From Auanema rhodensis (Eukaryota; Animalia; Nematoda), in NCBI GenBank assembly GCA_964057225.1, contig OZ059899.1, positions 16,306,001 to 16,370,000 of the forward strand: a stretch of 64,000 nt of DNA, read 5' to 3'. Positions 4,809 to 60,959 of the stretch are shown piece by piece. Positions within the stretch are counted from its first letter, which is position 1. Each line of letters opens with the position of its first letter. A program made the position numbers and the translations under genes. The notes under the pieces are model-generated. The model was given only the letters and a program-made list of their open reading frames with translations. It searched no databases and was not told where the DNA came from.

Positions 4809-6623
4809 CTACATCTCGTCATCATTAAATTCGAAGTTGATGCTTCGACGCGTTCGGCTAAAATTATATCTATAACATAAGAGATGAGAACAAAAATTCT
4901 TCTTCAGATGATACTTTAAATGTGTATATTTGGGAAAACATATAGGAACCAATTTGGATATTTGTTCTATAACAGATTTATTAGTCGAAGGGACGGTAAA
5001 TGGTATTTCTTTATGCCGTACAATATGATGTTTCCGCAACTAAAAATTAACTTTACATTTATATATAGATACAGATAATACCGAATAAATAGAATAATAA
5101 GTAGCTGGGCATAGCGTGCACAATCGTGATTTTCTTGGAAGATGTTTACGTAAGTGCTCGCTTAGGTTGAGTGTACCGTTCTTTACTAAATAACTTAGTA
5201 TAGAAGTACAATCCTAAGAATATTATACTATCACTTTTATGAAAAATAATTTTTCTAACCGGATATTGGCATTTAATACGAATTCTTTTCAATTTCTTAG
5301 CATTAATTGTTTTCGGTGATTCCTCCACATCGCTTTCCACTGTTAGCGATGAAGTATCCACAAAGCTCGTCACACTTCTGCTTAAAATTTCAAATTAGTT
5401 TCAGTGATCCAATATTCTTTATGCCTGCATATGGTTTCTTCCGCCTCTTCATCAGCCTTTTTTTCACATCTGGAATATAAATAACATGTATAAAAAGTGG
5501 ATGGGTATGTACCGTTCCACAGTATGTTCATTGTTTTCAACACTAGCAACAGGTATATCTGGGATTATGACCTTAGATTTTTCACTGCTATCAATAAGTT
5601 CGGCTTCATCTTCATTATCCCTAAATGAAATAATCAAAAACATATTATAATTAACTTGATGAATACTTATGTACAACAGAATTGGCAATTAGAAAGGAGT
5701 TTGTATTTTGAAGATCCGCCGTTAAGGGGCTGGTATCACTGAGATCATTAACTGGTGAAATAGTGCATAAGCTTTCTAAATTGTTGTAAATTACAAAATT
5801 TATTTATAAATATATGCTAAAACTAACGATCAGACACACACGACAGGAAAGATAGTTCAGGATCTTCATTCAAATTTAATTCACTAAGTTTACAAATTAA
5901 TTAAAATATTCTTTTCAAAACGTACCCAGTTAATTTCTTACACTCATCAGTAGATGTTGATTGACCGAATATATCGGTTACTTGAAATATATCAGTGAAC
6001 AGGGAACAATTGATAACATTCTTATCCATCAGAGCTTGAATGCTATCTTGAGTACTTTCCTTTTTTGTTAATTGTTTTTCATTTTTTTCAATATCTTGTA
6101 TAATACTATTCAAAACTCCTTCAACAGCTATATCAATAGTATTGGTGCTATGCACTTCTGGCACTTGACTATCTTCCTTTAAGTTTTTATATAAGTTGCT
6201 TTCGTCTAAGTTATAATAATCCCGACCTAAATACAGTAAAATAATTAATTATCAAAACGGTTTAAAGCCGAATGTACCCATCACAGTGCTCATTTGGAAC
6301 ACTGGAGGCTGGTTATAATCACGTTCATATATGGGAGTTGAGCAATGCCATCCACTATATTCATGTGGTTGAATATTCTGATTCGTGTATTCATGATTCA
6401 CAGATTCGACGTGTTTGAATGATTGATCAGAACAGGGTTCGTTATGCGGAACTTCCATAATAACAAAATCAAAAACTCCAACGGACTTCTAAATGGAAAA
6501 GGATGTTTCAATCAAAGATTACGATGTTACCAGTATATATTCTAAAGATATACCATTCCTCTTGATTTTGTTTATTGATTCGCCGAATATATTTATTTGG
6601 ATATGGTAATTCCCAAAAGTCAT
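4809..6623 (-). CDS. HIM-8/ZIM-like zinc-finger protein, paralogue 2 (spliced)
   Basis: ATG at 6623: MTFGNYHIQINIFGESINKIKRNGISLEYIL|KSVGVFDFVIMEVPH...WHCSTPIY. Fingers are C-x4-C...H-x3-H and C-x2-C-x12-H-x4-H, followed by LVPICFP. Stop at 4809. Confidence 0.75.
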
Positions 6624-6714
6624 TGTAGTGAAGAAAACTCCAGGAAGAACAACAAAAAAATCAAATCCAGGTAGAAGCTTAAATAGCTCAAATCACTTAT
6701 GTTATGTTAATTTG

Positions 6715-6748
6715 TTTCGCTGCGGGACCATATACGCAAATTTGAATT
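6715..6748 (-). promoter_or_regulatory. Conserved upstream motif of paralogue 2 (plus strand tttcgctgcgggacc...aaatttgaatt)
   Basis: Lies ~90 bp upstream of ATG 6623, with the same GGTCCC-x-CGAAA core plus TTTGAA. Confidence 0.5.
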
Positions 6749-7062
6749 GGCTTCAATCTCTTACCAACTACCTGTAACCAATTATCCAAATTTCAATCGG
6801 ATTTATCAAGAATTTCAAAAATTATTTTTAACAAATGAATTCATAAAACCAATTGAGGTAATCTATATGAAAAGAGATTAGAAATATAAATATCTTTATT
6901 ACGGGATTAATAGCACAGGGATAGCTTGTTCATTTAGTAGTAAATGTATAAAAAATATAGTGGTGATTTTTGCTCTTAGGCCGTACTTCCAGAATGAGTT
7001 GCATGTCTTAAACGTTTGAAATGTATTCTATAAATAAGCTGTGATACTAATGAAAGTAAATA

Positions 7063-41500: not shown

Positions 41501-44500
41501 GTAAGACGGTCCAAATAAACTGTTCTTCTTTGGTGAAGACCATATACTCTGAAAATAAATTTAAAAAACTCTGCCAATGATTATCAAAGTATACTGTCGG
41601 TAAAAGTCATTGGCTTCAGGATGTTGTTGAGCCTTTAATTCTTCTACGTCCTCAAAGAACCCATCAATGGGTGCTTCAAGAGCGTTTAAATCCTCTACGA
41701 TTTCGTTAACAGTTCGCTCGATTTCGCTTGGAGAAGCCTTATCAACGCGACTCTCAACGTCTTCGATACCTAAATATAAACTATCTTTCAGTTTAATTCG
41801 AATTTCACTAACGATGTAAAATTAAGTCCAATTTTTCATTCGTAATTCCAATTCCTCTAGTTAATCTACTAATGATATCGTTTTGATTTCCCTAAAATGA
41901 AACAATCAAATATTTGAACTCAAAATAACATGAAGCAAGGTGATCCCTAACCATGTATTGATGTAGTTTGTTATACCAAAAAAAGTCAAAGGACAAGCGA
42001 CAAGTACAATGTTAGTAAGTTAGACATAAACAAACCTGAGTAACAGATTTTTCGTGAAGAACAGAGAATCTTCTTTCGATTGAGTTTAATAATTCGTTCC
42101 ACGCTCTATGCAGAGATGGCGTAGATAGGCTAGATGGTATGGCAAAATGTTCTGTGCCATGAAGGGCTTTTTCCAAATAATCATAGACTTGAGCCATACG
42201 TCCTTTTGATTCAAATTTCGGAGGTAAGTCTTCGTCGCGGAACCGTTCTAACTCGGATATGAGTTCAATAGCGGAATGAGTGAAAAGACGATCATCGACC
42301 AAACGGGTGGCACGTTCAACCCATTCCAACCATTCCCGTGCTTCTTCTATGTACTGATCTTGGACATTGAGCAACTAAACAACCAAACATGCACACCGTG
42401 TTAATTAGACATATGACATCATATTATTAGAGACAAATATTTGACGACAAAAATTAAAAAGCATTTACACTTACTCTTGAAAGTTCTGGTAAATGTGGAA
42501 GAGCCTCATACAAAGAAGAAACGTAAGTGATGATAGATTTCTCATCTGGATTATCAGTGTCTACATCCTCGGGATCAAGAAGTCGGGAAACTCCGAATTC
42601 CCTTTCAGCCGCGGCGAAAGCATTTTCCAATCGCTCGCGATTTGATACTGATGGATCGCTGATCTAAAATCGTAAAGGTATATCAACTTCTCAGCGTAGT
42701 ATATCATCATTAAGAGGTCTACAATAAGCATTACGGTCCAAGAGATCGAATCAGGCATTTGACTGCTAATCCCATCAATGGTATAAAGGAAAACTAGCCC
42801 TCTTGAATATCATCTATTCTCCTGACTATTACGAAACGTTTGAAGCTATCATGAATGCTTTAAGGTGATAAACCAAATAGCAATGGGATGAAATACTAAG
42901 CTATGAATTCCGTTATTTTTTTGTACATTTTGTGACCAATATAAAAAGACCGAAAATTAACAATATAGGAATCTAAATAGTTCCAAGCAATTTCATATTT
43001 TACATTCATGTCACAAAATCAAGCAAAAATTCATAGTTTCTTTTAACAAAACTATATTGATGAATCATAAATTGGAAAAGGCGTAGGTGACAGCACACAA
43101 TACACCTGAGGAATATGCAAAAAAAGACTCAACGACAGCATTTAGAATAGAAATGGGTCATCTGGCAACGCACATGATTGCCTAAACCATTTCTGGACGA
43201 TGATCCCATACGAACAAAAGGGAAAAGTTGTTCGAGCTAAAATTTACAAGAAAAACAAACGCACCTTATTCCAATCGATCAGATTTGGTCTATATCTGTG
43301 TAGAATAGCATTGAAAGCCAATCCATCCCTCCAAGAGGAAGAGAAGTTCTTAACGTCAACTCTAGGATATCCAGCGGTCACCTTACGTGCCCATTGAAGC
43401 AAAGCATCGCGCGCGGATGATGCATCACTTCCGTGGAGAATTTCAGAGACCTAAAATCATATGTTTACAAAAAATTCACAAATTGACATAGATGGTTTAA
43501 TATACATAAGTATGCCCTTTCTAAGCTATTTGCCGCACTCTGTTTGTTGTAAAATCGTGCCACAATACAAAAGAATATTTGTCTGTTCAGCGTTGGTGGC
43601 GCTCAAACTTTCAATCATTCTTTTCTTCATGAAATTATTCTGTCGCGCAGGAAGCAAAAAGGCTCAGCCAGCCAGCATAAGAATCTGAAGGTAGCTAGCG
43701 TTGCCGCATATTTGCGTTTTGGATCGCATTTTCGAGTAGAAAATGGCCACGATGAAAAGATTATAAAGCGCCTCTCCAATGTAAGGATTACGAAGTAGAA
43801 CATAACGAAATTATTGATCACTAATGGATCAAGCACTTATTCTTATAACACCTCGAGGACATGCAGACATTTACAGTGCTCATTGATCTTTCACAGCCAA
43901 TAATTGTAACTGGAACTAAACAAAGCGAAAATGAAAGGAAGTCATTAGTATTTCATTTTTGTCTTCCATCATATTCACTTTGCCAAGATAGATCGTGGCT
44001 GTTGCTTGCGATCGACTGTAACAGGGTGTGGTCTCGTTTTCAGACACACCACTCGCGCCAAACCCATCAAAGATTCTAAGTTTTCCATCAATTTTCTAAT
44101 AAACACAAACAATCGTAACTAAGTGGTCAGAGTGCCAAAGTTAACTAAAATTCTTATCTACCATCCTGAACAACAATCTTGGGAGTGCCTAATAAAGAGA
44201 TCAACTGATTGCAGAAAGGGCGGGTCAAGGTGTAAATATATGTATAAATATATTCGCCAAGGTTATCGTACAATTACATTAACATTTCAATAAGAAATTG
44301 AGACATCTTCCGATAGTGGTCAAATCTAAACAAAACTACTTTGGAGGGATGACAAAGTTGCAAAGACATCAAGACAACAATCAAGTTTTCGGAACTGAAT
44401 GTAAATCTCTTAGTTTATAAGATAAGAACCGAACTAATGAACAAAAAGAATGCTTACAGAAATTAAGCAATCAATCCGAAACCGCTCATCAATAAATTGA

Positions 44501-47500
44501 TGGAATAATCAGGTTGATGAATACAGATATTTCGTATTCTTCGGATAACATACGATATTAGAGCGAATCTTATACTATTAGTGCAACTACTACGATTAAT
44601 CAAGTGTGGAAAATCAAAGTGATTTGCAAAACAAAAAAAAATCCAACCTCATCGCCCCTTCGAGCACTTCGAGAGCGTTCTCGCTCCCCTCTAGTCTTCT
44701 TTACACGCTGAACTTTACGTTCAAAGTGCTCACGAGTTTCGTACGAACTGCTTTCAGAAAAGCCACCGGATTGTTGGGCATTGCTTAAATGGCGATTATC
44801 TATCGACAGAAGCTGACCGTTTTGATGGTGACCATGGCTCATAAAGCCATTAGATCCACCGCTACGATGATAATCGTCATAAACAGCATGGCCGTTCCGT
44901 GAGCTGGATGCTGCAGCGCCGGTGGATTCATGTTTGCGCTCAGCTTTCTTGGAGTAGGAGCGAATAACTTTGAACATTGTGATTGTGCTAGCGACGAGTA
45001 ATAGTAGTAATGAGAATGTGGCTAGACTTTCTGGTACATTCCACACGTGCGAGTAGCACCAGTCGTAGTTAGGATGGGTTTGACAGCAACCGCGGTTGGG
45101 GGGCGCGGTGACTCCGCCTACTTGTGGTCGTCGCTCGTCCCTGCCCCTGCTGTCGTAGTCGCTGCCGCCATCCAACAACCACCATGGAAAGCGGAGACGA
45201 CCTGTTCCGTGTCCTTCCTCTGTATCGTCGTCGTACGCATCCTCCATTAACCACACCCTCTGAATCAACGTCGAGATCACCAACCAAACACCTAAACTCA
45301 TCACAACGCAAAAAGAGTTAAGGGTTTTTCAGGTATAATCTCCTGATTCAATAGCTGGATGTGTAACGGATATTGATACGCAGTTGTGGCTCAGCGGATG
45401 GAACTGCGCATGTCAACAACTAGCATTTACGGATGTAATAGAATGAACGATTTGATCTCCTAAATAATCGACTGCTAGCCAAAGAGATCAACAAATGATA
45501 ATTTTCAGTGTTCAAAAGTTTCTTAGAAATAATCCAGGAAAAAAATTAATTTTTTTAAAAAAACTCAATATAGGCTTACGCTTTTCACCACAGAAAACAA
45601 CGACGGACCGAGCGAAGAGAGCACAGAGGCCCAAGCTGATAAGGAAAAGCGCCAAACATAAGTACTTCAAACATTATCAGCTCAATCAACTCATTTAATG
45701 AGATTTTGAAAAGCAATACCGAATATGATGTAGATTGCTCATATACCTCAATATTTGGCATCTACGTTCTGCCCAAAATGGCAGCTAGCAATTATCATAT
45801 CAAGGTAGAATCCGGTTGTAGCCACATAGCAAGGCTACGCATTTGTATGAAAATACAAATTAATAATGAAGAAACATAAGGATTTCTGACGGGAAGAACC
45901 GGCACAAATGAACCAAATCCCATCATCTCATCTTATATTATCATCAGCCATCAGCAAATAGCTTGACCAAAAGAAGTAGTCGCTAATGAAAGAATAATCC
46001 CGGGCGTAATAATTACTAGATTTTTAGAGGTAGTAAATGTATTCATACAAAGTTCACTTTAAAGTTCATATTCGTACACATTAATGCATTTAGCTGTTGA
46101 TAAAACTATAGCTCTAATTATTTCTGACAATACATTCCAGCTGCGGTTGCTTTCTTTCAATCAACAAAGAAAAAGCTGAAAACTATCACTATCTTGGAAA
46201 ACGAGAAGAAAATAGAGAACAACTAGGGTTGGTAGGTTACGCTATTTTTTCACGAAACAAACAATTGATATCAAATAAGCATTTCGATTTCTCGTATACT
46301 AGAATAGTCCGGCACAACTACCCCGTGAATGAAGATCCTTATAGTCGTTTCAGAATCAGAAGCTTTTATCAATTAAAAAACACCAAGATGAAAACTGTCC
46401 CACTTTCCGTAACAAACATGTACTTAGGTGATAATACGTCAACGACCGTCGCCACCACCCTTACGGTCGAACATTTAAAGACATTACATTGTGACTGTTG
46501 AACTATGAATAATTCTCCACCTTTCCTTATGCATGTAAGAAATAGACTATGTTTTCGAAATCTAATCAACAAATCCTATTCAAAACTAGTTAACTTAGCA
46601 GAAAAGGCTTGCCTTCAGCATTACAATAACGTTTATCAAAGTTGGTTGTAGCCATATTTTGATGCATTATCGCTTTCAATGTCTATTTTTTCAGAGCATA
46701 TTATTCGGGAAGGGAAACTTAAGGCTGCCAGCCCTTAGTCATGATCATAACTAGGCCCTTTCTAAAAACTAGTACTAAGCGCATTGCCCAACAGTTAGGC
46801 AATTTCATTTTGTATAGAAATAATGAGAAATATGTGGGAGTGGTTACTCCACAAGAAAACGAACAACTCCTATCCCGAAATGGCCAATAATAGCAGACGT
46901 CGGAGATGGACTGGCAACTGTTCCTTTGGTGATGGCAATATATTATATTGGCCCACCTACGGAAATATGTCTGCGAGTAAGATAACGATTTTTTCGTATT
47001 CTATTCATGAAACGCAGTAATAATACCAAAAAATGGACATGTTTCGATAAAGATCAACAGCTATCTATTCAGGTACTTAATTATTGCAGAAGTTAGCAAA
47101 AAAAGGTTAGATTTTGAACAAAATTATTTCAGCTTGGAGTGTAGCATGTAGAATAATTTGTTTCAGTTTAGCGGGTGCTAGGAAAACTGTGGTAATGCAA
47201 TATCGTTAAGCAATTCGATGGCATCAATATACTGACACCTACCTTATTTGTGGTTTTCGTTTTAATAACTTTGATAGCGGACTCGAATTTGGTTTGCAGT
47301 GACTACTAGAATGGCATTGAAAGTAAACGAAATAAAGGAACAGTAGTGACCGGACGCCAAAGACAAGAAAAGCAGCCAAAGGAAATAAATCATATTATGC
47401 TATATACTTTCAACAAAGCATTGTTTCTTGCTATTTAGGTAAGTTAAAGGCAAGATGTGAAACATAATTAGAGTGTCTCTGAGAATGTAAACTGCATAGG

Positions 47501-50369
47501 GATCAGAAAAAATAAGTAAGAATTGTGGCAAAAAATTAAAAGAGTGAGTATAAATAAACATAGAAAAGGAAAAAGGGTAAAAGCAAAAGCAAGTGACCTG
47601 ATTAGTAGTAGTTGTTCGCCCGCTGACTACAACACTCGTGGATTCGTGGGCCCATTGTTCAACTTGTCTTTGCTTAATTACTGAAACCTGGAAGTTCAGA
47701 ATAATTGTCCAAATCAATCCTAGTATAAGTTTTCCATTTCCTTCTACAATATCTTCTGGGCGTATATTAACTAATTTTATCTGTAAAGAAATTAATGAAT
47801 TAACATTAATACGTTAAAGTAACTCACATTCTTTCTCTTCAAAAAGTCTAAGCAATACTGAACATTCTGTATTCTATGAAACCGTGTATACCCATTTTCA
47901 CGATTCTTAAAAAAATACTATTTTGTTATCAGAATCTGTGGAACTTACTAAGCGTTCACCCGTTAAAGCTTCTAAAAGGGCGATAAGCTTATAACCGTCT
48001 TGAAGATCTCGGAATAAATCCTCTACTTTTTGTCCAGCCTTTAACAAATTACATTAAACTCTTAAATGTTGGTCCGGGAAGCCCCTCAAGAAAATGAGTT
48101 TGTTCTTGGTCATTTCAACACTAAGAAACTATGTTTGTTCTTTCACATTCAGAAACATTCTTAGGCAGACCCAGTCTTCATAAATTCTCTTCACTGATTC
48201 CAAACGGAAACGTCTTACGAAAGAATCACCAATGCGAGTGCTTTCACACAATTGCTCAAGAAAACTTCTCGTCGTGGTCGGGCGGTTCTGGCACAATGGT
48301 GTCTCAGATCGCAGTCAGGTAAAGAAGAAGAAATCAAATACAAACATAAAATAGCTGGCGTTAGCTTGTAAAAGTTTCTGGTTAGCCTACTTCATGAAGC
48401 AAGATTCAAACAAAACAACATATGAGAATACTTAAGAGGTGCCATATCTGGTCCTACTTTAGTCTATTTCAACTCCCTGATAGGTTTTATGGAGCTCATG
48501 ATCATCAAGATGGCAAGTGCATTACGATAGGAGCGCCACCTAATCTTCAACACAAACAAAAGCATGTGCACAGTGCTGCACATTGGCTTACTAATAAGAT
48601 GTCACATATTGACTGTCCTCTAAGATGAAGAGAAGCGTAACAAAGACCTTAAAATTCCCAGCCGCCTACTCGCTTTAACTGTTTTTTTTTTTTGATAAAA
48701 AAAATACAGCTGATATCAGAACACAAAACAAAGCATTAGTAAAGGAAACCAAACAAATTTCTTTAAAACAATCATAAATACAACAAAAATAGTAATAGAA
48801 AAAATAATAGATCGCCCCCCACCCCTTATATTTCTCATCATTTCAATTTTATGAAAAAAACATTTCTTATCAGGAAAAGTTTTGAGTAAGATGCCAATAA
48901 TTTGCATCATCTGACAGAAAACTGAAATAGCCTACAGGCTAAATGTGCTGACCCCGGTTTGGCTAAGATATAAAGCAAGATAACAAAAGTATATATGAGT
49001 AAAGAAAAGAAAGTGACCATGGAGCGTCAATGAAACGAGGTAACGAACCAAATAAACATAAAATACCATCAGAAAAACAATACTGAACAGGAGGAAAGGC
49101 TATTTATTTGAATCTGATGATTTTAACCCATCTTCCGAACATAAACCCTTATATCACGATATCGTTTTCCCACAATAGTAAAATAGTAGATGACCGTTAT
49201 ATAAATCAATAGCAATGAGGTAGAAAAACTCACCTTACTGAGATGTTTGTTGACCCACTTCGTAAATGTCTTTTTCTGCATGTTATCTCGTTCATCTGAA
49301 ATGAAAGAAAAATGTTGCGCTTTTGTGTAAAATTTTAAATTTCTCTTTCTATATCCACTGATCAAGCATATATTTTATGAACATATTTCTCTGCACACAT
49401 ATACATATAAACAAAGAAGTAACGTTCCCTATATCATATTTTTCAGTATCCATTGCATATAAGCGTTGATCAATGAATGATTGGCAAATATCACCCTATG
49501 CTGACCCCTACACGCCTAACTAACAAATATGACATTGTGCACCTTTCGCTGCCGCTAGAGCAACAAAGCCTAAACCGTTAATAAACAGTACTGGAAGCCT
49601 ACATTTAATGAACCATCTTCGGATTATTAACGCCTATCACAGTACTATTATCCGTAAATAATTCTTTTTAGGATATGGTGTTCTAGTGAGTGATTGCATA
49701 TCGCATAATATTCGACCCGATAAACATAAAAGATTATATCCCTATCATCGTCGGATAACATGGATAACAACAAGGATTTTGCGAAAATGCAATATATTTA
49801 CGAACTGATAGAATATTGTTCAAAAATAAACCAACTTAAAACTTAAAGAACTATTCGAATCTTAATATAGTATTACATACTTGTCTCACTTTCTTTCATG
49901 ATAATTACATAAAAAATAGCAAAACTAATCGCAGAATAAAGAACAGAATCAATCTTTTTAGCAAACCATTTTTTTTTGAATTTTAATCTAAAATGATTAT
50001 CAAATCCAGATCAACGAATTAAACACTGCCTGTCACTAAGAAGCTCCACTGGCTAAAACCAGCTAGCTTGAAAAATGTAAAAGTAGAAATGAATATTTAA
50101 AAATGCGCGCGAAATGATAAGTTGAGTAATTTTTTCGAAATGGTGAAATAAAGAATAATAATATAACAATGAAAACTCTTAAATAAACTAGAAATAGAAG
50201 AAATAACAATTCAGAAAAAGATTGAATACAAGAATAAATGGCAATAATGTACTTGAAAACACATACCTTTAAATTTTTCTCTATTATGCTCATAATGCTC
50301 GAGTACTTCGACTTCTGCAGAATCTTTATAGGTAGTAGACTGTGGAGAGTAAATGTCCGAGTAAGACAT
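14502..50369 (-). CDS. vab-10: Spectraplakin VAB-10B: CH1-CH2, plakin, spectrin repeats, EF hands, GAS2 domain (B-specific exons 29080-14502)
   Basis: First exon 50369-50267 (MSYSDIY...[14 protein letters not shown]) splices in phase 1 to [19 protein letters not shown] (49295-49234). CH2 contains [13 protein letters not shown]...WRDGLAFNA. Many spectrin-repeat exons follow. GAS2 reads [29 protein letters not shown]. The last exon is [15 protein letters not shown]. Confidence 0.93.
29756..35599 (-). CDS. vab-10: VAB-10A-specific giant terminal exon (plectin repeats)
   Basis: Intron-free ORF of >1900 aa with repeated [LM]S[LF]xEA[IV]xxG[LI][IL]D motifs. Acceptor ttatag|GTT at 35599 is phase 0, and the exon has its own stop at 29756. 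Confidence 0.95.
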   Translation of the reverse strand, partial: VPDLNINRGNTVFEVIGQENPDEWEGVSEIPDVAKITEHEDEMQMFQEETVTKTQFYEMEGILHKQTGEILTFVEAVRQGLLDLHAGGGQFFDLVSGSRISLEKAAELGYIDGSFQEALNTHWGIHHPETKQSVSLMDAIQIGLYDPDIRQLRDINSGEILSMYECVSRGIINFDTQHKLIKMGILKLPPMPLSQAIEQKILNTATGQFTGKYSNETMPIKDALYHGYIQIVTPPQNPMIATTLSDAIENEFINANNGEFSDRNSNETFTLREAVSKQNNLLNLHVPEVINTSDNSRLTLGDAVVRNAVSVRNGNFTDLQSRRTISLRDAHREHLICKPMTLTEMSSKDLIDSTNHFIDRGTKHRHTLLEAIAAGVVDAEVRHIVDPDEKDVISIAEALERGILGADGLIILEKQQKTFTIPEAVREGLLTKRVRHSIFDVKGIRNTMTDQNLSFNEAVDVEAILTSSERVVDLATRDSYPIQQESSEKIIDSALHELLNKPVGIKDDKGNYTLNLIQAVSRGIIDHQKAVFFNKNTKQELSPRDAYLAGMVNLRGALLISGLFDVHPSLITPVKKVEKKKRVSRPGQTGLELAENQVKVTLEEAMKQGLIDSRTQRFRQGDIDMSLDDALSQGLIDPHSEWIVPSKSAGVGPTIEEKTTESVTETGQQLAPKYYPDKNIEESVTTIKRVRTTETTALGGPGGVSTYRAITGGKGAIEVPASGYHIYEAERKGIIDLTTGEISAPNVDRHINFAEGIELGVIDAATISVKDNSGAMISVKEALDKNIMAKNGSVRNNSIEKAIEEKLIVIEAEPLVPYNNQAKKIIQIPTGSGPVISFRPVGQPIIEEQEQVWSFDATTGLLVDHHSGEKLTLERALNAGKLTPEDLSVRDALTGREMSFVEAEKWGIIDSKRAFFLNKSEGKRLSFTEAAQQHFLYPNGGVPDNAGDAVHTTVKTQTRTQVSKKEALSSGAPLSDNTLGKALTLGWYDSGNGMFTNPDTHKQMTLKEAIIKGLFNPYDSSVIDTRRNKEISLLEAIQEGIVDDTAGTVQDTANNKKHDLQSALKAGILKGKIMGDTLDSGLLSGRLDLSTGHYDNNGKQVPLHEALNKNIVDQHSVVVRDPANGEELSYREAITRRIVDPERGLVHNQQTNESTSFPSALTSGLIASAGSTSKPTQSHRIVEQKLQLTPFVPAQVAASKDGRHEYVDLGGGKQVMVKVVRGEGGVEKGEYVDPSTGMKFTIQMHGDPFVTETKTSVKSTSQVQSVELEPHAEFVGIDRIRDKRNNRIMSLEDAKRIGLARVDKKGKQMTKTYSVFRSNIQNAVNKGVMDSHMEKISLQDAIQAGIIDIRELTYRNPKSGEAIPLTQAANMGLVDVTLSETLNKGVCNPGNNERITISKAIELGIIDSRTGEVRDPLTRKPLTWLDIIKPVWQAITSDGVFDPSKGNRVPVTTALNDGLINTQKRCYHNPITGEDVDLNDAVERGLIDRSTYELITKPFVEDYRTHRQLNLIEAVDSKLIDPKNRTIQLSRQSIVPIAKAVQDGRIPSDIGEKLRRVDKMNFAEALGKGIIDVRANIFSDPDTGRQMTIAQAIEEGHIDTGNVESIEGADEKNLTVVLNSEEFDENSGRIRDKKTGLYLTFRDAVDRDVIDGDSLLHDLDSSQTMTLREALSRGKIDNDGKFNAGHSKLKLKEAVKVGLIALIDSPMQAAQAVTEAVKRRDAEGYKFRIENLDAGNRGSRTSVPKFREETTVTRLTPQKQEPALSVRMRHSQTSIGDRARSIIEDPSALADLHHDFLSRLEANRFDTDEKIIESPSDHRRVSVREAAETGLLDVLTGEFVHPETGRRYSIPKAVHMKMVTGDSAKRLMEGLNMSIEELNNATAGQSAPSPGGSHPEGSSTTRTWTKTINWAGNPSELRKSQTDPLAEYTTYHSSTSDKTQDAPSWAR
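35835..36125 (-). CDS. vab-10: vab-10 phase-0/phase-0 exon encoding an ER/K charged single alpha-helix
   Basis: 291 bp between tacag| and |gttagt, encoding EEEERRR...[33 protein letters not shown]. Confidence 0.85.
44648..45301 (-). CDS. vab-10: vab-10 alternative first exon with predicted signal peptide and transmembrane helix, skipping CH1
   Basis: 218 codons from ATG 45301. Donor GAG|gttgga is phase 0 and matches acceptor ttttag|GTC at 43450 (CH2 exon). Confidence 0.7.
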
Positions 50370-51804: not shown

Positions 51805-52679
51805 CTTTGATGTGTTGTAGTACTTGTTTATAGTTATGCGATGGGATAGAAGACTTTTTTGTTGGAGTCATTTGAGCGTGGTGACTCGTCCACAAGTTAG
51901 GAGATTCAGAAGGAGGATATGTTGCAGTTGGTGAACCACTGAACAAATATTTTATCTATACTACGAAGATGCTTCCAAAAAAGGGAAAGGCGATTGGTGG
52001 ACGCCAAAATAATCAATTACGTGTACATAACAACATTAAAAGGGTAACATGAAATGATCGGAAATACATAAATTAGGTAATAAGACTGAATAAACATGAA
52101 AAAATTTAGTTTGAACGAACATACAGAGGATAAAAATTCAATATAATTTAAAATTGTTTCTAACCGAATATGAGTAAACTCATGTTCCGACCGTATCCAT
52201 TGTTGTGAGTTTGTGGACAAGCGTCTAGTCTCGTCAACTGGGCTCGAATCGCCAGATGAATGCATCAGCCGATTTAAATGGCTATGTCCTCGAGGAAATG
52301 ACGATACAGGCATGACGGGAAGATCATGATCAGGAGATGTTTCGAGAATAAATGACGACGAAGGGCTTGTCATCATTTGTCTCTCAGCAAAACCTTCATC
52401 TTTGTTATCTTCGTCTGAACGGCAATGGGGAAGCATTGGTAAAAAATTGGAATATGAGCTCAAATTTAAATTTTGTAGTCTATCAAATAGGGGATGATGA
52501 GAAAATAGCTGGTCAGCATGAATTGAATGAGTAGAAGGCAATACTTCTGAAGAAGTTTCAACAGGAATCGCAGCGTTATGACGTGTAGAATGAATCACAG
52601 TGAAGCTACTTCTCCCAGATGACCGAAAAATATTTGGTTCACCTATTGGTGATGAGAAGCTGTCTTCTCGTGAATGCAT
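51805..52679 (-). CDS. vab-10: vab-10 alternative 5' exons (52679-52165, 51938-51805), Ser/His/Pro-rich N-terminus
   Basis: Phases 2 then 1 join as ...[15 protein letters not shown] at 49295. Confidence 0.7.
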
Positions 52680-54316
52680 TATTGCCAAGTAAAACAGACT
52701 GACTGTGCATTGCTTATCAGTTGCAGCGCATAGCCATTGCTCGTGTGTTTTAATGAAAACTGTATTCGATAATCATACTGCTATGATAACTATGCATGAA
52801 TAATAGCCATGGCAAAACGTATTAGAATTTCTAGCGAAAGAAAATAACAATGAGTGCTAATTTCGTCATTTACTAAGAAGATCAGCCTGTTTTCTTATCA
52901 TGCATTACATACAATCATGAAACAGAATATAATACTTAATTGGAAAATAAAGCATAGCATATGAGAGCAACTGTAACTAACTAAATCAACTATTTCTATC
53001 TATCATTCCATATTTATTCTTAATCTTCCTATACCTACCGGAATTTTATTTTTTACAAACCGTATTTAGATATAGGATGTTGTGCATTTAGTCAGTTAAT
53101 ACGAAAGTCGATACGCACAGTTTGCGTTGATACGTTAGCACAAATGACAGAAAGGCTTATGCGACCGGTAAATAGCATCGAAAACGATAAAGTCAAAGCA
53201 TTACTAGAGAAAAAGTTTTCATGTTATAATGAAAGTAAAAAAAAAACAAAATAACTAAGACAAAATAGAAGAATGAACTATTAATATGAAATAATTATTT
53301 TCATATAAATTAAGGTCATAAGCTCAGATTGGAGCTTCAAAAGACATTTTCGAAAATTCTTTTTCTACGGCGAGGAAGGTAAATACCATATGACAATAAT
53401 GTGAAAATATAAAAATAAGGAAACCGTTTCTTATTGAAAGAAAATCAAAAATAGTTTCTTCTTATTATTAGCAGATTTTAACAAAATGTTTTTATCATTT
53501 TTTTCTTTTCTTTTGTGTTAAAAAAATAAAGAAATGCTCAATGAATGATCAGGTAAAATGAATTATAACAAAATAGAATTATTTTTAATATTATTTTGTA
53601 TATTACATATATATATATACATATACATATACATATATATGTATAATAATTGTACAAAATAAATTAAGAAATAAAATGTAAAAGTTTCAACTAAGCTGTT
53701 AGAAGGAATGTTCAAAACGTATTTTTCTTCTCGAAAAAAAAAAGTATAGATGATGTGGTAATGTATTTGTAGCCGAGGACTGTCTTTTCTAATCGTCCAC
53801 TGTCTATTTGTCTTCTTGTATCGGCTTCACACTTGATGTTTTAGAGAAGAAAATCACTTGACAGCCATTAAAAATCAATTAACCTTATTATTATATTTAA
53901 ATTTTATATTAACTATATAGGATATTGAATATTCTGAATAAATAGTTTTAAATAAAACACAATAAGCTTCAAAGTTATTTTAAAATATGGAAATGGTTAT
54001 TTGGGACTAAAACATTATAAAAATCATGTTTCAGTTTCTTTGTGCACATCGACTGTTGAATATTCCAGAAAGACATCAAATACATGCACAAACACGAATT
54101 TCCGTATATTTGTAAACTGATAACGATATTCTCCTCGAAATGTCTCATATTTGAATAAAGCTTTACACCCCACCCAACGTCATTGTGACTAAAACATTTG
54201 GGAAGCTTCACACAAGCACACCTTCTGGCTTTAACATGTGCACACATACAAATCATTAAATCATCTCTCATTCAAATATATTCAACTTATTTTTGTAAAA
54301 AAAATTGAAAACATAC

Positions 54317-55640
54317 CAATAAGTAGAGCTACATGATGATCAGCAAACTCGTACGAATATGCTTGTTGTCGAGCAGAGATAACTGCATCATCATCCAATG
54401 GTTCCGTTGGAAATTTGTGTTCTTTACGGATGATTGTCGTTCGACGTTGTTCTTCAGTTATCCGGTATTGCTCTAATAGAGATCGTTCAGCCGATTCTAC
54501 TTCACGTTGTCGTCTAAATGGTTTACATACGATCAATCAAACGAATGAATCAATTTGCATAATTTAAAAAAACAACTACTTACGCTATGTCATAAACCTT
54601 ATGAACAGAAGGTTGACTATGATATTGATTGTGTCTATCTGATTGAGCCTTGGAATCTCTTCTGCAACATAATTATATTTCAAATACAACCATACTTAAT
54701 CTTTGGCGTTACAAAATGGTATTTAGTTTGCTCACGTATTCACGTGCACACGTGTGAATTTTCACGTAATTGTTTATACACGCAAATGTTTAAAAAAATA
54801 AGTTCATATATGTATATACATACTTAAGTTTAAATATTATAATCAATAATATTAATTAAAATAATGAAATAATTAGTTAAAAATTATAATATTTAATGTA
54901 CTAAGTATTTATGAACTTTTTGTAAACTTACGGTAGAGTTGATGTAGCAGATGTTGCTTGTTGATTAAAATTCTCTAAGTTGTCATATAACTGGATCTTT
55001 TTTGGGCCACTCGTTCGGTCTTCATATACAGATTGTGAAAATGAAGGAATTCCTCTATTTATGCTGACTTCATTGCCTCGAGGAACTTCGGAAACACAAC
55101 GGGAACGAACATATCGTTCATGTCGATGTTCAAGCCTATAAGAGAAATAGTTGAAATATTATACTATTTTTCACATAATATTCTTTTTTTTTCAAATTAT
55201 ACTTCAGGTTAATTGCGTTTTTATATAATTTTTTAAAATGCACGAAACGTCAGCTTTGACAATAAATGTGTCTGGATTGGTCAAACGTGTAGTACTTCTA
55301 ACAGCTGTTACGTTGAGCCAATCACACAAAACAATTTCAGATTAGATTGGACTGAAACCGAAGCTTTTTTTAAGTTTATGTGAAATATTTTGGATTAATT
55401 TTTGATCTGAATGTATCTTTATTCATTCTGTACTGAATAGGTATGTATATGACTCAATTGAATAGCTACAAAACGTTTTAAGAAAAAAAACTCTAATAGA
55501 ATAGAACTGAAAAGGAAAAAGAAAAAATATTGAAGTAGAATGAGGATGGAATGATGAAAATAAATTAAATTTTACCACAATTTGGGAAATTTAGAAATGA
55601 CTCACCTATCTCCTCGAGGGGCACAACATTTAGCACCCAT
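54317..55640 (-). CDS. vab-10: vab-10 alternative 5' exons (55640-55606, 55135-54932, 54661-54584, 54513-54317) starting MGAKCC
   Basis: All junctions are GT-AG and in frame (phases 2,2,2,1), ending VALLI-D-ERD into the CH1 exon. Confidence 0.75.
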
Positions 55641-56968: not shown

Positions 56969-59103
56969 TCTATGTTCTTCCAGGTTTCACCAATCTAATT
57001 CATCTGCAACTTAACTTATAAAAAAAATATATTGATGAAAACGACAATCGAAAAAAGCATCTATATATGTAGTTAAGGTAAAATATTGAGGATGAAATAC
57101 TAAAATAGAGAACATTTGGAGTGAAGCAGCCATATTCTCCTAGAGATTCTGGTTGCATCAAATATAGTTCTCTCTTTTTCCTTCACTAATCCTTGCCGAA
57201 ATCCGTACGCATGAATGACAACAAAAAGCCGTCATTTATGTACATATAAGCGTCACTGTGTAGGAAGATGATATTCATTCAAGACTGTATGATGATTCTT
57301 AGTTGGCTTGGCAATATATGAGCAGATTGAAATCAGACGGAATTAAAAGGCAATATTCAAATATGATTGAACATAAAGACACAATTTGGGAATTTTCACT
57401 AGCTATCTAGAAAAAGAAATATATCAAAACTGTACTGCTAACAATATAGAACTACACCACGACTGGAAAATTGAAAATTGCAAGCCGACACAACGGATTT
57501 CAATAGTGAATAGCGGCAAGAGTTTCATTGTCTACAAGCTATTTCCATGACACATGGAAATTTAAATGGATATTAAACAGTGTAAAAGTAATATATGAAC
57601 TGGTGAAATAAACTATAAATCTTTCAAAGATTAATTAACAAGCTTAATCTCAGAAATCATATCAATATTCTTATTTTAAAACATATTGATTGAAATAGTC
57701 TATTAAATAGAAATAGAAGTAACCAAAATACAACCGCATACTATATAATGTTTCAAAAAAATGGTTCTGTACGTCACATTATTCTACAATGCTTTTAGAG
57801 ACCTTTTGAGTGAGTTAGCTAATATTGGAAAAAGATGAAGATGAAGTTTAAAAAGAAATTTGAATCTATTCTATGAAAGACTAATTTGCATATACATAGT
57901 TGACATATACTGAGAGGGAAGGAGGATAATTAGAGATGGACCGGTTACCAAAAGCGAAATCATACCTATAACGCATCTCTTGTTTACGTAAAGATCTAGT
58001 CTGGAAAAAAGTTAGTCAGTTGTAAAAAAAGGTTGAGAAACAGACAAGAGATGATGTGATTAGAAAGAATATAAAATACCTGAAACATACAATATTCAAA
58101 AGATCTATTCTGATATAAGTATGAGTCATACAAAGTTGTCAAATCATATTTGTGTTGCATACATTATATCAAATGGACAAAGTTCTGGAGTAAAATTTTG
58201 TGCTATTGTTCCCGAAAAAAAAACAATTTCAAAAGAGTAGGTTGAGAGTTCTTTAGTATTCACATTTTACAGAAAAGCTGGGGAGATACTTCATAGTTAC
58301 TCACATTTGTTTAGAAAAAAATTCAAGTACAGTATGACTTTGAAGTTACTCAATACAATGTTTCTGAAAAATACTTAGAAAAGAATAGATTTGTATTAGT
58401 TCGAAAATAGTTGAAGTATGGAGTTAAAAATTATTGGGGCACGTGCACACGAAGCGGTTTGCGATTAGATAGGTTCTAACATTCATCCATCAATATCGAA
58501 AAAGCAAGAAACAGCTAGTAGACAACAGTAAAAGCAGAACTTTGAGAGGATTAGTTGGACCCATATATGGTAGTTACAGACTGAATACTTCACATAGGTT
58601 GTGAAAGGGCTACAATTGACGAGGAAAATGAACAGCAGACCGATAACTGGTCTCCAGTGGCCAGCCTCGGTCAGTTCATGTCGATCTCTTTCCTATCCCT
58701 CTCTCGTACTTTCATAAAATGAACTACTTTGGTTACGAAAATCAAGCGGTAGTGTTTAAAATAAATTCGGAAAAATCCTTCCTTTCGACTTTTGATGTCT
58801 TCATATACATTGCAGCGGGATAACTTTGTTCTCTTGACGCTTTCCCGCTTAATCCGAAAACCATAAGTTTCTTCCGGAAACGAGAAGAAAAGACTCCGAA
58901 GAATTCATTTGAACGAGAGACCGGAATAGATAAGCTACCCGTAACCCCAAATCAGAACCCGTTTTGATATTTCTATTTCTTTGTATATGGTATTTAGATT
59001 GTATTGCACAGTAGGTTTAGGTGTACGATGGTTTATGAACAGTACAACAAATAAGTACCCTTAGGGTACGAGTAAAAAAACAACAATCCGCTCAAAAACA
59101 CGT

Positions 59104-60716
59104 TTACTTCTTCTTGGGGGCAGCCTTGGCAGCGGACTTGGTGACCTTTCCTTGTCCTCCAGCAGTCTTGTCGACAGACTTGATGACTCCGACAGCGACA
59201 GTTTGTCTCATATCACGAACGGCGAAACGTCCAAGAGGAGCGTAGTCAGTGAAGGATTCGACGCACATTGGCTTGGTGGGGTGGAGCTCAACGATACCGG
59301 CATCTCCGGACTTGAGGAACTTTGGGTTGTCTTCAACCTTCTTTCCGGAACGACGGTCGACCTTTAATATATCTCGTTAAGCTTCATATTAAAATTTAAA
59401 TATTAACCTTCTCCTTAAGTTCGGAGAACTTGCAGGCGATGTGGGCGGTGTGGCAATCGAGAACTGGGGTGTATCCAGCGGCGATTTGTCCGGGGTGGTT
59501 CATGATGATGACTTGAGCGTTGAAGCTACGAGCCTCCTGGGCTGGGTCGTTCTTGGAGTCAGAGCAGACAGATCCACGACGGATATCCTTGACGGAAACG
59601 TTCTTTACGTTGAAACCAACATTGTCTCCTGGGACGGCCTCTGGGAGAGACTCGTGGTGCATTTCGACGGACTTGACCTGAAAGAAAAAAATAGAAACTT
59701 TAAAAATTCTAAAAAATCTTACTTCAGTGGTGACGTTTTGTGGGGCGAAAGTGACGACCATTCCTGGCTTGATGACTCCAGTCTCAACACGTCCGACTGG
59801 GACAGTTCCGATACCTCCAATCTTGTATACGTCTTGGAGTGGGAGACGGAGAGCCTTGTCAGTTGGGCGAGATGGAGGGATGATGGCGTCAAGAGCCTCA
59901 AGGAGGGTCTTTCCGGAAGCATTTCCTTCCTTGCGTTCAACGGACCATCCCTTGAACCATGGCATGTTGGTGGAAACCTCGAGCATGTTATCTCCGTTGA
60001 ATCCAGAGATTGGGACGAAGGCAACGGTCTGAATTACAGCATAAGCTAAATATTTCTTTTTAGTAAACTTACAGCTGGGTTGTATCCGATCTTCTTGATG
60101 AAGGAAGAAACCTCATTGGTGATTTCAGTGTAACGGGCCTCAGAGAATGGTGGCTCGGTGGAGTCCATCTTGTTGCAAGCAACGATGAGCTGCTTTACTC
60201 CAAGGGTTTGGGCAAGAAGAGCGTGTTCACGGGTTTGTCCGTTCTTGGAGATACCGGCTTCGAATTCTCCAGTACCGCAAGCAACGACGAGAACAGCGCA
60301 ATCAGCTTGGGAAGTTCCTGAACAAACACAGTAAGGAAGCTAAAATTAAACTTGTCGTACCAGTGATCATGTTCTTGATGAAATCACGATGTCCTGGGGC
60401 ATCAATGATAGTGACGTAGTACTTGGCAGTCTCGAACTTCCAGAGAGCAATATCAATAGTGATACCACGTTCACGCTCAGCCTTCAGCTTGTCGAGTACC
60501 CAAGCATACTTGAAGGAACCCTTACCCATCTACAAAAAAATTTTGTTGCCATGAACTCTTATGAAAGCTTACTTCTTGAGCTTCCTTCTCGAACTTCTCG
60601 ATGGTTCTCTTGTCAATACCTCCACATTTGTAGATGAGATGTCCGGTAGTGGTAGATTTTCCGGAGTCGACATGTCCGATGACGACAATATTGATATGGA
60701 CCTTTTCCTTTCCCAT
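59104..60716 (-). CDS. eef-1A: Translation elongation factor 1-alpha (multi-exon)
   Basis: [65 protein letters not shown]; ends AAPKKK*. Confidence 0.99.
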
Positions 60717-60959
60717 GATAAAGAGCGAGAAGAGTAGTTACCTTCAATGCAGATAATTAAAAAAGAAGAGTTGAAAAGAAAACAAACACAAACAAGAACA
60801 ATTAAAAGATTAGACATGATTTATAAATTAAAGACTAAATCATACAGAGCAAAGACATGTTACGGAATGTAGAATAAAAAACCCAATGAGGTAAGAGCCG
60901 TGTTGGCACACTGTTCAGCAGCCCACCGTGGAGAGAACTACACAACACACAAAAAGGTC

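What the first reader, a model, noticed from the sequence alone, without database searches (positions are those of the whole stretch)
44648..45301. Predicted membrane-spanning spectraplakin isoform
Seen: an exon inside the intron between CH1 and CH2 encodes a hydrophobic N-terminus ([18 protein letters not shown]), ~70 polar residues with three Cys ([12 protein letters not shown]), a TM-like stretch ([21 protein letters not shown]) and a basic stop-transfer ([10 protein letters not shown]). It splices in phase into CH2. Established: spectraplakins are cytosolic linkers. Vertebrate dystonin-a2 has an N-terminal membrane anchor, and CH1-less isoforms bind actin poorly. Inference: a type I membrane VAB-10 that ties intermediate filaments or microtubules directly to a membrane, with a small extracellular or luminal domain.
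Basis: partly seen in the sequence, partly recalled or inferred. Interest (0 to 1): 0.78.

Follow-up and report, generated by a model that had tools for sequence, protein, structure and literature searches.

The report
Membrane-anchor first exon of vab-10
A real, expressed alternative first exon of a nematode spectraplakin (vab-10) gene puts a membrane-spanning helix in place of the first actin-binding half-domain; the same exon is already annotated in C. elegans and predicted across nematodes, but no searchable paper has studied it.

Summary
Window 44648-45301 (minus strand) is a 218-codon open exon in the 4.1-kb intron between the last CH1 exon and the CH2 exon. Spliced contigs from four public runs (one study) join 44648 to 43450, in phase. 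Their word depth is 2-4 times that of the CH1-to-CH2 junction contig.

The exon is not new as a gene model. It is the orthologue (53% identity) of the first exon of curated C. elegans vab-10 isoforms: NP_001122565.1, NP_001335521.1 and NP_001335522.1. The last two carry the VAB-10B tail. Trichuris muris and many other nematode models have the same exon.

The hydrophobic helix (aa 92-110) is conserved across the phylum. So are a cysteine pair before it, a +4/+5 basic flank after it, and a near-invariant Ser/acidic-then-basic motif ahead of CH2. Charge asymmetry predicts N-terminus outside, giant C-terminus cytosolic.

The start codon is unresolved. RNA contigs stop at 45130-45176, short of both upstream ATGs. 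M1 with its signal-peptide-like leader, M19 (homologous to the start in the two closest relatives), and the invariant Met109 (no anchor) all remain possible.

No paper in the searchable library describes a membrane-spanning VAB-10. The scan had not followed this exon up before.

The parts
44648..45301 (-). Alternative first coding exon of the vab-10/spectraplakin gene (218 codons counted from the first in-frame ATG)
   Evidence: ORF and splice sites. RNA contigs cover 44646-45176. It is single-copy in its own genome. It is orthologous to the C. elegans first exon and the T. muris first exon.
45248..45301 (-). M1-L18, a hydrophobic signal-peptide-like leader. It is uncertain whether this is in the mRNA.
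   Evidence: KD10 is 2.22. Strongylid ORFs have a similar 17-21 aa leader before a second Met. It is not covered by RNA contigs and is absent in L002 and L004.
45249..45259 (-). Conserved 11-mer AGGGTGTGGTT just upstream of the M19 ATG. It may be a 3' (trans-)splice acceptor or a promoter-proximal element.
   Evidence: The 11-mer is identical in the window, L002 and L004. It is read in a different frame relative to the ATG in L004, and it is preceded by AG with a pyrimidine-rich run. Its function is inferred.
45245..45247 (-). ATG of Met19, homologous to the first Met of the closest relatives
   Evidence: Alignment with L002 and L004 (MASDSS...GTGRW) and with the strongylid M-x-x-DYF start.
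45029..45244 (-). Predicted extracytosolic segment (aa 20-91): acidic, Gly-rich, with Cys72, Cys73 and Cys82 and the QTHP..WC..VW motif next to the membrane
   Evidence: The Cys pair and Trp before the helix are conserved from Trichuris to Caenorhabditis. The AF2 model is disordered here. All indels against L002 and L004 are in frame, and dN/dS is 0.24-0.54 in the QTHP-to-TM block.
44972..45028 (-). Transmembrane helix (aa 92-110, [19 protein letters not shown])
   Evidence: KD19 is 2.0. Additive Hessa dG is -0.65 kcal/mol, and at most about +1 in 26 of 29 species. The AF2 helix has pLDDT 86-97.
44975..44977 (-). Invariant Met109 codon at the cytosolic end of the helix; a candidate internal start
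   Evidence: It is invariant in all alignments. 22 of 43 predicted homologues start here. In Loa loa and Toxocara the ORF is closed 5-6 codons upstream.
44927..44971 (-). Basic juxtamembrane flank [15 protein letters not shown] (net +4)
   Evidence: It is nearly invariant across Nematoda, and the charge rule places it in the cytosol.
44660..44764 (-). Near-invariant motif [33 protein letters not shown] just before CH2
   Evidence: This is the most conserved block of the exon. The AF2 helix at 167-193 is of low to medium confidence. There is no Pfam match.
44646..44647 (-). GT splice donor of the exon
   Evidence: Sequence. The joint is seen in 4 of 4 runs.
43265..43450 (-). CH2 exon, the common acceptor for both the anchor exon and the last CH1 exon
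   Evidence: Contigs cover 43265-43452. Joints run from 44646/8 and from 47595. The translation shows CH2 residues.
47595..47780 (-). Last CH1 exon, spliced directly to 43450 in the canonical isoform
   Evidence: A joint at 43447/47595 in 3 of 4 runs, with micro-introns 47781-47827 and 47906-47948 further upstream.

Best explanation
This is an alternative first coding exon of the nematode spectraplakin gene vab-10. It lies in the intron between the CH1 and CH2 exons and is spliced in phase to the CH2 exon. I infer that it is driven from its own start site there. The resulting isoforms lack CH1.

The exon encodes, in order:
- a short, fast-evolving N-terminal segment with a conserved cysteine pair
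- one transmembrane helix
- a strongly basic flank
- a low-complexity linker
- a near-invariant Ser/acidic-then-basic helix next to CH2

The inferred mechanism is as follows. The helix acts as a signal-anchor or stop-transfer sequence. The 70-90 N-terminal residues end up in the lumen or outside the cell. The CH2-plakin-rod-tail body stays in the cytosol. In this way the isoform would tether microtubules (VAB-10B tail, as annotated in C. elegans) or intermediate filaments (VAB-10A tail) directly to a membrane, with weak actin binding.

Shown here: the exon, its splicing, its orthology, and the conservation of the helix and motifs.

Inferred: translation from an ATG upstream of the helix, membrane insertion, topology, and which membrane.

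Among the cases where the helix is translated, my odds are about 45% for a start at M19 (type III anchor, no signal peptide) and about 40% for a start at M1 with a cleavable leader (type I).
For: Structure and phase.

RNA: the joint 44648>43450 is seen in 4 of 4 runs. Its contig word depth is 48/34/40/8.5, against 17/9.5/10/0 for the CH1>CH2 joint. In the three deeper runs the two depths sum to within about a sixth of the shared CH2 contig's depth (76/51/44). No contig lies in the intron.

Orthology:
- C. elegans curated isoforms start with this exon, lack CH1 and carry the VAB-10B tail. Identity is 53%.
- T. muris A0A5S6QD24 has the same layout.
- So do 20 or more other nematode gene models.

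The sequence upstream of Met109 is coding:
- All indels against L002 and L004 are in frame, and dN/dS is 0.24-0.54.
- The C..C..W motif plus a hydrophobic stretch is kept in clades I, III (Parascaris), IV (Steinernema) and V.

Helix quality and topology: dG is at most about +1 in 26 of 29 species, the C-flank is +4/+5 and the N-flank is mostly at or below 0, +2 at most. AF2 gives a helix with pLDDT 86-97.

Known precedent for membrane-anchored and CH2-only spectraplakin isoforms: PMC3352950 and PMC3352338.
Against: RNA contigs end at 45130-45176. Neither upstream ATG (45301, 45247) is shown to be in the mRNA. The ends fall in a 63-68% GC peak, so this may be a coverage dip, but it could also be a real 5' end.

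Met109 is invariant. The Loa loa genome closes the frame just upstream of it, and the Toxocara assembly does too, though its helix-coding sequence lies one base out of frame. A start at Met109 would skip the helix.

The runs are only guessed to be RNA, come from one study, and are contigs rather than reads.

No SignalP or DeepTMHMM was available. The hydropathy, dG and charge analyses are my own simple scripts.

No experiment on any orthologue was found.
Confidence: 0.7

Rival explanations
1. The exon is used as a first exon, but translation starts at the invariant Met109. The product would be a soluble, CH1-less isoform beginning [15 protein letters not shown], and the upstream open frame would be a 5' leader. 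A mixed version, with both anchored and soluble forms from two starts, is included here.
For: Met109 is invariant. 22 of 43 predicted homologues start at it. Loa loa and Toxocara have stops 5-6 codons upstream. The one filarial-like ORF that extends upstream has dG +4.85. The RNA contigs reach no upstream ATG.
Against: The frame is open for 117 codons upstream of Met109 in a 36% GC genome. Indels are in frame and dN/dS is below 1 against relatives. The Cys motif and hydrophobic helix are conserved across four nematode clades. Out-of-frame ATGs at 45171 and about 45040 lie in the transcribed leader and would hinder scanning to Met109. C. elegans and T. muris curators start upstream.
Confidence: 0.18
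2. The exon is a separate small nested gene, as C. briggsae CBG15814 is annotated, encoding a free single-pass membrane protein unrelated to vab-10.
For: In C. briggsae the homologous ORF is annotated as its own 339-aa gene inside the vab-10 intron. Many databases hold it as short stand-alone ORFs.
Against: All four runs splice 44648 to the CH2 exon in frame. No contig continues past the donor into 44429-44625. C. elegans curated models join it to CH2. The stand-alone ORFs simply read through into the intron.
Confidence: 0.02
3. The exon is an internal cassette between CH1 and CH2, entered through an internal acceptor. This is how the Trichinella, Rhabditophanes, Strongyloides and C. angaria models are drawn. 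It would give a CH1-linker-CH2 protein rather than a new N-terminus.
For: Several automatic gene models place CH1 upstream of part or all of this exon.
Against: In this genome the last CH1 exon is joined directly to 43450, and no joint enters the exon from upstream. The exon contig is unbranched from 44646 to 45176. A transmembrane helix between two halves of one cytosolic actin-binding domain is topologically awkward.
Confidence: 0.03

Closest known systems
C. elegans vab-10 (ZK1151.1) isoforms NP_001122565.1 / G5EFD1 (1497 aa), NP_001335522.1 (4946 aa) and NP_001335521.1 (5059 aa)
   Same: The first exon lies between the CH1 and CH2 exons and has the same order of parts: Cys pair, hydrophobic helix, M[14 protein letters not shown], linker, [31 protein letters not shown], then a splice into CH2. 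CH1 is absent. Identity is 53% over 155 aa.
   Different: The C. elegans segment before the helix is about 150 aa and Ser/Thr/Pro-rich, against about 73-91 aa here, acidic and Gly-rich. The tail used in this genome is unknown. In C. elegans the two long forms carry the VAB-10B (GAR) tail. I found no paper on these isoforms.
Trichuris muris spectraplakin A0A5S6QD24 (7296 aa), and the Oesophagostomum, Ancylostoma, Haemonchus placei, Ostertagia and Caenorhabditis sp. 36 models
   Same: They have the same N-terminal exon and direct entry into CH2. This shows the layout predates the split of the major nematode clades.
   Different: These are automatic or semi-curated predictions. Start codons differ, and some begin at the Met109 equivalent.
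Vertebrate dystonin-a2 / BPAG1a2 (N-terminal transmembrane isoform)
   Same: It is a spectraplakin isoform, made from an alternative 5' exon, that carries an N-terminal transmembrane domain. That domain tethers a cytosolic giant linker to membranes: perinuclear, ER and Golgi (PMC3352950; PMC3352338).
   Different: Dystonin-a2 keeps the full CH1+CH2 actin-binding domain after its anchor, whereas here the anchor exon replaces CH1. No sequence similarity was detected: phmmer against 1.84 billion proteins listed no vertebrate spectraplakin, every hit I could name was a nematode protein, and the rest were unnamed short ORFs. Its membrane role has itself been disputed (bioRxiv 10.1101/122010).
CH2-only spectraplakin isoforms (MACF1a3, BPAG1a3, Drosophila Shot type C)
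   Same: They use an alternative start inside the gene that drops CH1. CH2-only isoforms bind F-actin weakly (PMC3352950).
   Different: None of these is described with a membrane-spanning helix, and BPAG1a3 has a myristoylation motif instead. The insect CH1-less first exons also start MYK, but the profile comparison gives 2.8% probability, so homology is not supported.

Membership tests
Orthologue of the C. elegans vab-10 anchor-exon isoforms | The exon lies in the intron between the last CH1 exon and the CH2 exon of the single spectraplakin gene | tested here: met
   The exon at 44648-45301 lies inside the intron 43451-47594. The gene is single-copy in its genome. C. briggsae shows the same nesting.
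Orthologue of the C. elegans vab-10 anchor-exon isoforms | Spliced in frame to the CH2 exon, with no CH1 in the product | tested here: met
   The joint 44648>43450 is seen in 4 of 4 runs, in phase 0. The C. elegans isoforms have CH2 at residue 308 and no CH1.
Orthologue of the C. elegans vab-10 anchor-exon isoforms | Significant sequence similarity over the helix, the basic flank and the C-terminal motif | tested here: met
   BLASTP gives 53% identity and E 2e-42. Invariant columns are listed.
Dystonin-a2-type membrane-anchored spectraplakin | N-terminal transmembrane domain encoded by an alternative 5' exon | tested here: met
   Hydropathy, dG and the AF2 helix support it. This is prediction only.
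Dystonin-a2-type membrane-anchored spectraplakin | The anchor is followed by the complete CH1+CH2 actin-binding domain | tested here: not met
   The exon splices straight to CH2, and the CH1 exons are upstream and skipped.
Dystonin-a2-type membrane-anchored spectraplakin | Sequence homology to the vertebrate isoform-2 exon | tested here: not met
   The phmmer search of 1.84 billion representatives listed no vertebrate spectraplakin among its 50 hits. Every hit I could name was a nematode protein; the rest were unnamed short ORFs.
Dystonin-a2-type membrane-anchored spectraplakin | Perinuclear or ER membrane localisation | not testable with these tools
   This needs tagging and microscopy.
Type I membrane protein (cleavable signal peptide plus stop-transfer helix) | N-terminal signal peptide that is translated and cleaved | tested here: inconclusive
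   M1-L18 is hydrophobic, and 15 of 24 homologous models have a hydrophobic N-terminus. Against this, the leader is not covered by RNA, L002 and L004 lack it, and the conserved 11-mer changes frame. Translating T-rich non-coding DNA can mimic such leaders. No SignalP was available.
Type I / type III single-pass protein, N-out C-in | A single hydrophobic helix with a positive cytosolic C-flank | tested here: met
   The C-flank is +4 and the N-flank is -2 here, and the asymmetry recurs across most of the 29 species tabulated.
CH2-only spectraplakin isoforms (Shot-C / MACF1a3 class) | Homology of the isoform-specific first exon | tested here: not met
   hhalign of the nematode profile against the insect profile gives 2.8% probability.

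The most novel reading that the evidence does not exclude
All nematodes make a spectraplakin that is itself an integral membrane protein. In these samples it would be the major CH2-containing transcript class. A small disulfide-capable ectodomain sits outside, and the giant microtubule- or filament-binding body sits inside, so the cytoskeleton is tied to a membrane or to extracellular matrix without a separate receptor. The invariant Met at the cytosolic end of the helix would allow a second, unanchored form from the same exon, giving a switch between tethered and free linker.
Probability: 0.4. Interest if true: 0.65.

Novelty: new member of a known kind. Interest (0 to 1): 0.45.

Why it matters
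VAB-10 is the only spectraplakin in nematodes. It is a model for how epithelia resist force at hemidesmosome-like attachments and for nuclear and cell migration. Published work treats it as two cytosolic isoform classes, A and B, which reach membranes through receptors such as LET-805, MUP-4 and MUA-3 (PMC2199363; PMC7544507).

This analysis points to a third class that would itself be anchored in a membrane. It is conserved from Trichuris to Caenorhabditis and lacks CH1. In the samples laid here it was more abundant than the CH1 class.

That would change how tagged-allele and RNAi results are read, because reagents against common exons hit it too. It might explain VAB-10 at apical membranes where the known receptors are absent. 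It also offers an invertebrate counterpart to the disputed dystonin-a2 anchor.

The idea is directly testable in C. elegans, where the exon is already annotated.

Tried and rejected
- **Pfam scan of the exon:** only a sub-threshold OAD_gamma hit.
- **Protein-language-model atlas:** best score 0.79, to generic single-pass membrane proteins including influenza M2. This is below the level that counts as evidence.
- **Homology to the insect CH1-less Shot/MACF1 first exons:** these also start MYK and have an RKV..R.EE stretch, but hhalign gives 2.8% probability, so it is rejected.
- **Nested independent gene and CH1-exon-CH2 cassette:** both rejected by the joints.
- **C. elegans genomic locus:** fetching it by exact protein look-up failed. 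P0104 and P0157 are not on record and P0158 is too long. The C. elegans comparison is therefore at protein level only.
- **Signal-peptide leader in L002 and L004:** I looked in all three upstream frames and found none.
- **5' end of the mRNA:** The 5' end is estimated only from where the contigs fade, which coincides with a GC peak, so it stays unresolved.
- **Literature:** six searches found no paper on a membrane-spanning or CH1-less VAB-10.
- All searches were by exon reference.
Full report
**What is there.** On the minus strand, an ATG at 45301 opens a 654-nt (218-codon) exon that ends at 44648. A GT donor follows it. An AG acceptor precedes 43450, where the CH2 exon begins ([23 protein letters not shown]...), so the join is in phase 0.

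The window carries a whole spectraplakin gene on this strand, from about 57 kb down to 14.5 kb. It has CH1 exons near 49.2 and 47.6-48.0 kb, a 5.8-kb plectin-repeat exon at 29.8-35.6 kb, and spectrin-repeat exons below that. Pfam recognises nothing in it. The exon is single-copy in its 181-Mb assembly. An earlier agent's note calls the genome Auanema. I did not verify that.

**Transcription and splicing.** Four small public runs from one study hold the exon. Their contigs lack introns, so they behave as RNA, although their records only allow that as a guess. All four contain a contig joining 44646/8 to 43448/50 with GT..AG ends. Three also contain the canonical joint from the last CH1 exon (47595) to the same acceptor. 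Two micro-introns of 47 and 43 nt lie further upstream. No contig lies in the intron between 44625 and 43641.

Word depths compare as follows:

| Contig | X1 | X2 | X3 | X4 |
|---|---|---|---|---|
| Anchor exon > CH2 | 48 | 34 | 40 | 8.5 |
| CH1 > CH2 | 17 | 9.5 | 10 | 0 |
| Shared CH2 exon | 76 | 51 | 44 | - |

In X1-X3 the two junction depths sum to within about a sixth of the shared CH2 exon's depth. With the tool's caveat that contig depth is a poor measure, the anchor-exon class looks at least as abundant as the CH1 class in these samples. These joints rule out two rivals: a separate nested gene, and a cassette exon entered from CH1.

**The gap in the RNA evidence.** The exon contigs stop at 45176, 45161, 45164 and 45130, in order of decreasing depth, with no extra sequence beyond. 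Codons 1-42, including the ATGs at 45301 (M1) and 45247 (M19), are therefore not shown to be transcribed. The ends fall inside a local GC peak of 63-68% in a 36% GC window. A coverage dip is a fair explanation, but a real 5' end near 45180-45230 cannot be excluded.

**Relatives.** The word search found 43 short homologues. They include Heterorhabditis, Strongylus, Haemonchus, C. briggsae CBG15814, Onchocerca, Thelazia, Romanomermis, Panagrolaimus and Aphelenchoides. The exhaustive phmmer search found 50 hits; every hit that could be named is a nematode protein, the rest are unnamed short ORFs, and no vertebrate spectraplakin is listed. Among them is a 7296-aa Trichuris muris spectraplakin that begins with this exon and runs straight into CH2. 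A region search with a long query found 28 full-length models that contain the exon's C-terminal motif. Many have it as the N-terminus and lack CH1: Oesophagostomum, Ancylostoma, Ostertagia, Haemonchus placei, Nippostrongylus, Loa, Onchocerca, Toxocara, Parascaris, Mesorhabditis and Caenorhabditis sp. 36.

Listing the members of the C. elegans VAB-10 clusters showed three curated ZK1151.1 isoforms: NP_001122565.1 (1497 aa), NP_001335522.1 (4946 aa) and NP_001335521.1 (5059 aa). All three start with the orthologous exon, have CH2 at residue 308 and lack CH1. The two long ones share the VAB-10B tail. Identity to the window's exon is 53% over 155 residues. The isoform is therefore already in curated annotation. 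C. briggsae still annotates the exon as a separate gene nested in the vab-10 intron.

**What is conserved.** Four blocks recur:
- two cysteines and a tryptophan just before the helix (C-x4/5-C-[DEH]-..-W)
- about 20 hydrophobic residues
- an invariant Met followed by [YF]KV[13 protein letters not shown]
- at the exon's end, the near-invariant [31 protein letters not shown]

With the additive Hessa scale (values from my memory of the 2005 paper), the best 19-mer has dG -0.65 kcal/mol here and at most about +1 in 26 of 29 species. The 15 residues after the helix carry +4 or +5 in most species (+2 or +3 in three), and the 15 before it carry at most +2, mostly 0 or negative. That is the classical signature of an N-out, C-in single-pass anchor, and it fits a C-terminal body that must be cytosolic. 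AlphaFold2 on a 28-sequence alignment gives one confident helix (residues 73-102 counted from M19, pLDDT 86-97). It also gives a weaker helix over the basic motif, with disorder elsewhere.

**Is the part upstream of Met109 coding?** I compared the window with two relatives fetched as DNA (L002, L004). All six or more indels between M19 and Met109 are in frame. The Nei-Gojobori dN/dS for the QTHP-to-helix block is 0.24-0.54. The frame is open for 117 codons upstream of Met109, where a 36% GC sequence would carry a stop about every 14 codons. The Cys motif and helix are kept in clades I, III (Parascaris), IV (Steinernema) and V. I take the helix to be coding.

The exceptions are instructive. Loa loa has an in-frame stop six codons before the Met. 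The Toxocara canis assembly has the helix-coding sequence one base out of frame. Filarial worms may therefore make only the unanchored form. The invariance of Met109 suggests it can serve as a start elsewhere too.

**Which start codon?** Two lines of evidence pull apart.

For M1: the leader is hydrophobic. Strongylid ORFs show the same pattern of a 17-21-residue hydrophobic leader, then a second Met, then DYF. In 15 of 24 homologous models the first 30 residues contain a strongly hydrophobic 10-mer, against 5% of random windows from the same ectodomains.

Against M1: the two closest relatives have no Met or hydrophobic stretch upstream of their MASDSS start, which aligns with M19, in any frame. 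An 11-mer, AGGGTGTGGTT, is identical in all three species immediately upstream of that ATG. It is read in different frames in the window and in L004, so it is conserved as DNA rather than as protein. It follows an AG and a pyrimidine-rich run, like a 3' (trans-)splice site. In addition, translating T-rich non-coding DNA yields hydrophobic peptides, which weakens the 15-of-24 count.

I leave this open, at roughly 40% M1 (type I) and 45% M19 (type III) among the cases where the helix is translated. Both give the same final topology.

**Comparison with known systems.** The functional analogue is vertebrate dystonin-a2. Its alternative 5' exon adds a transmembrane domain that places the protein on perinuclear, ER and Golgi membranes (PMC3352950; PMC3352338). 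That claim has been disputed (bioRxiv 10.1101/122010). The nematode exon differs in three ways. It replaces CH1 instead of preceding a full actin-binding domain. It shows no detectable sequence similarity to vertebrate proteins. It carries its own conserved cysteine and basic motifs.

It also belongs with the CH2-only isoforms (MACF1a3, BPAG1a3, Shot-C), which bind actin weakly. A profile comparison with the insect CH1-less first exons was negative.

Published work on VAB-10 describes two isoform classes sharing one 5' region (PMC2199363; bioRxiv 10.1101/681072). Six full-text searches found no mention of a membrane-spanning or CH1-less VAB-10. One observation may be relevant, but this is speculation: VAB-10::GFP lines vulval apical membranes before the receptor MUP-4 appears (PMC7544507).

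**Verdict.** However, the signal-peptide and type I detail and the start codon are unresolved, and membrane insertion is inferred. The isoform is an orthologue of annotated models rather than a new prediction. I rate it as a new member of a known kind, of moderate interest. Its value lies in showing phylum-wide conservation, apparent abundance, and a clear experimental path in C. elegans.

The joined exon-plus-CH2 protein was never built or searched.

Noticed in passing
window 44648-45247 compared with L002 and L004: Synonymous differences are much rarer upstream of Met109 (pS 0.26-0.58) than downstream in the same exon (pS 0.79-0.91). This suggests extra nucleotide-level constraint, or a different mutational or GC regime, in the 5' part.
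   Followed up: no
window 45249-45259; L004 about 223-233; L002 about 1371-1381: The 11-mer AGGGTGTGGTT is identical in three species just upstream of the start ATG. It is read in different frames, and it is preceded by AG and a pyrimidine-rich run. It is a candidate trans-splice acceptor or core promoter element.
   Followed up: partly
L006 (Toxocara canis) about 1460-1500; L005 (Loa loa) about 1480-1500: In Toxocara the sequence homologous to the Parascaris helix (..LFLFV..ALAA) lies one base out of frame with the following MYKV. This is either an assembly error or a real loss. In Loa loa a TAA closes the frame six codons before the Met.
   Followed up: partly
L001 (C. briggsae) 6001-7020: CBG15814 is annotated as a separate 339-aa gene inside the vab-10 intron. 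By homology it is the anchor first exon read through into the intron, so it is probably a mis-annotation.
   Followed up: partly
P0054, P0085, P0092-P0095 (Trichinella), P0097 (C. angaria), P0057 and P0070 (Rhabditophanes, Strongyloides): Automatic gene models put CH1 and this exon, or its 3' half, in one protein. Either an internal acceptor is really used in those species, or the models are merged.
   Followed up: no
window 47781-47827 and 47906-47948: Two micro-introns of 47 and 43 nt in the CH1 region are confirmed by spliced contigs.
   Followed up: yes
P0124, P0131, P0136 (insect MACF1/dystonin isoforms): Insect CH1-less spectraplakin isoforms also begin MYK(F/I) and contain IVRKVTTL(S/T)R.EE before CH2. 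This is reminiscent of the nematode MYKV and [15 protein letters not shown], but the profile comparison was not significant.
   Followed up: yes
window 59100-60740, minus strand: An elongation factor 1-alpha gene ([23 protein letters not shown]...) lies directly upstream of the spectraplakin gene.
   Followed up: no
window 54317-55640 and 52020-52772, minus strand: Further candidate alternative 5' exons of the same gene: another first-stage note reports an MGAKCC start at 54317-55640, and a 251-codon open frame lies at 52020-52772. C. elegans likewise has four different N-termini.
   Followed up: no
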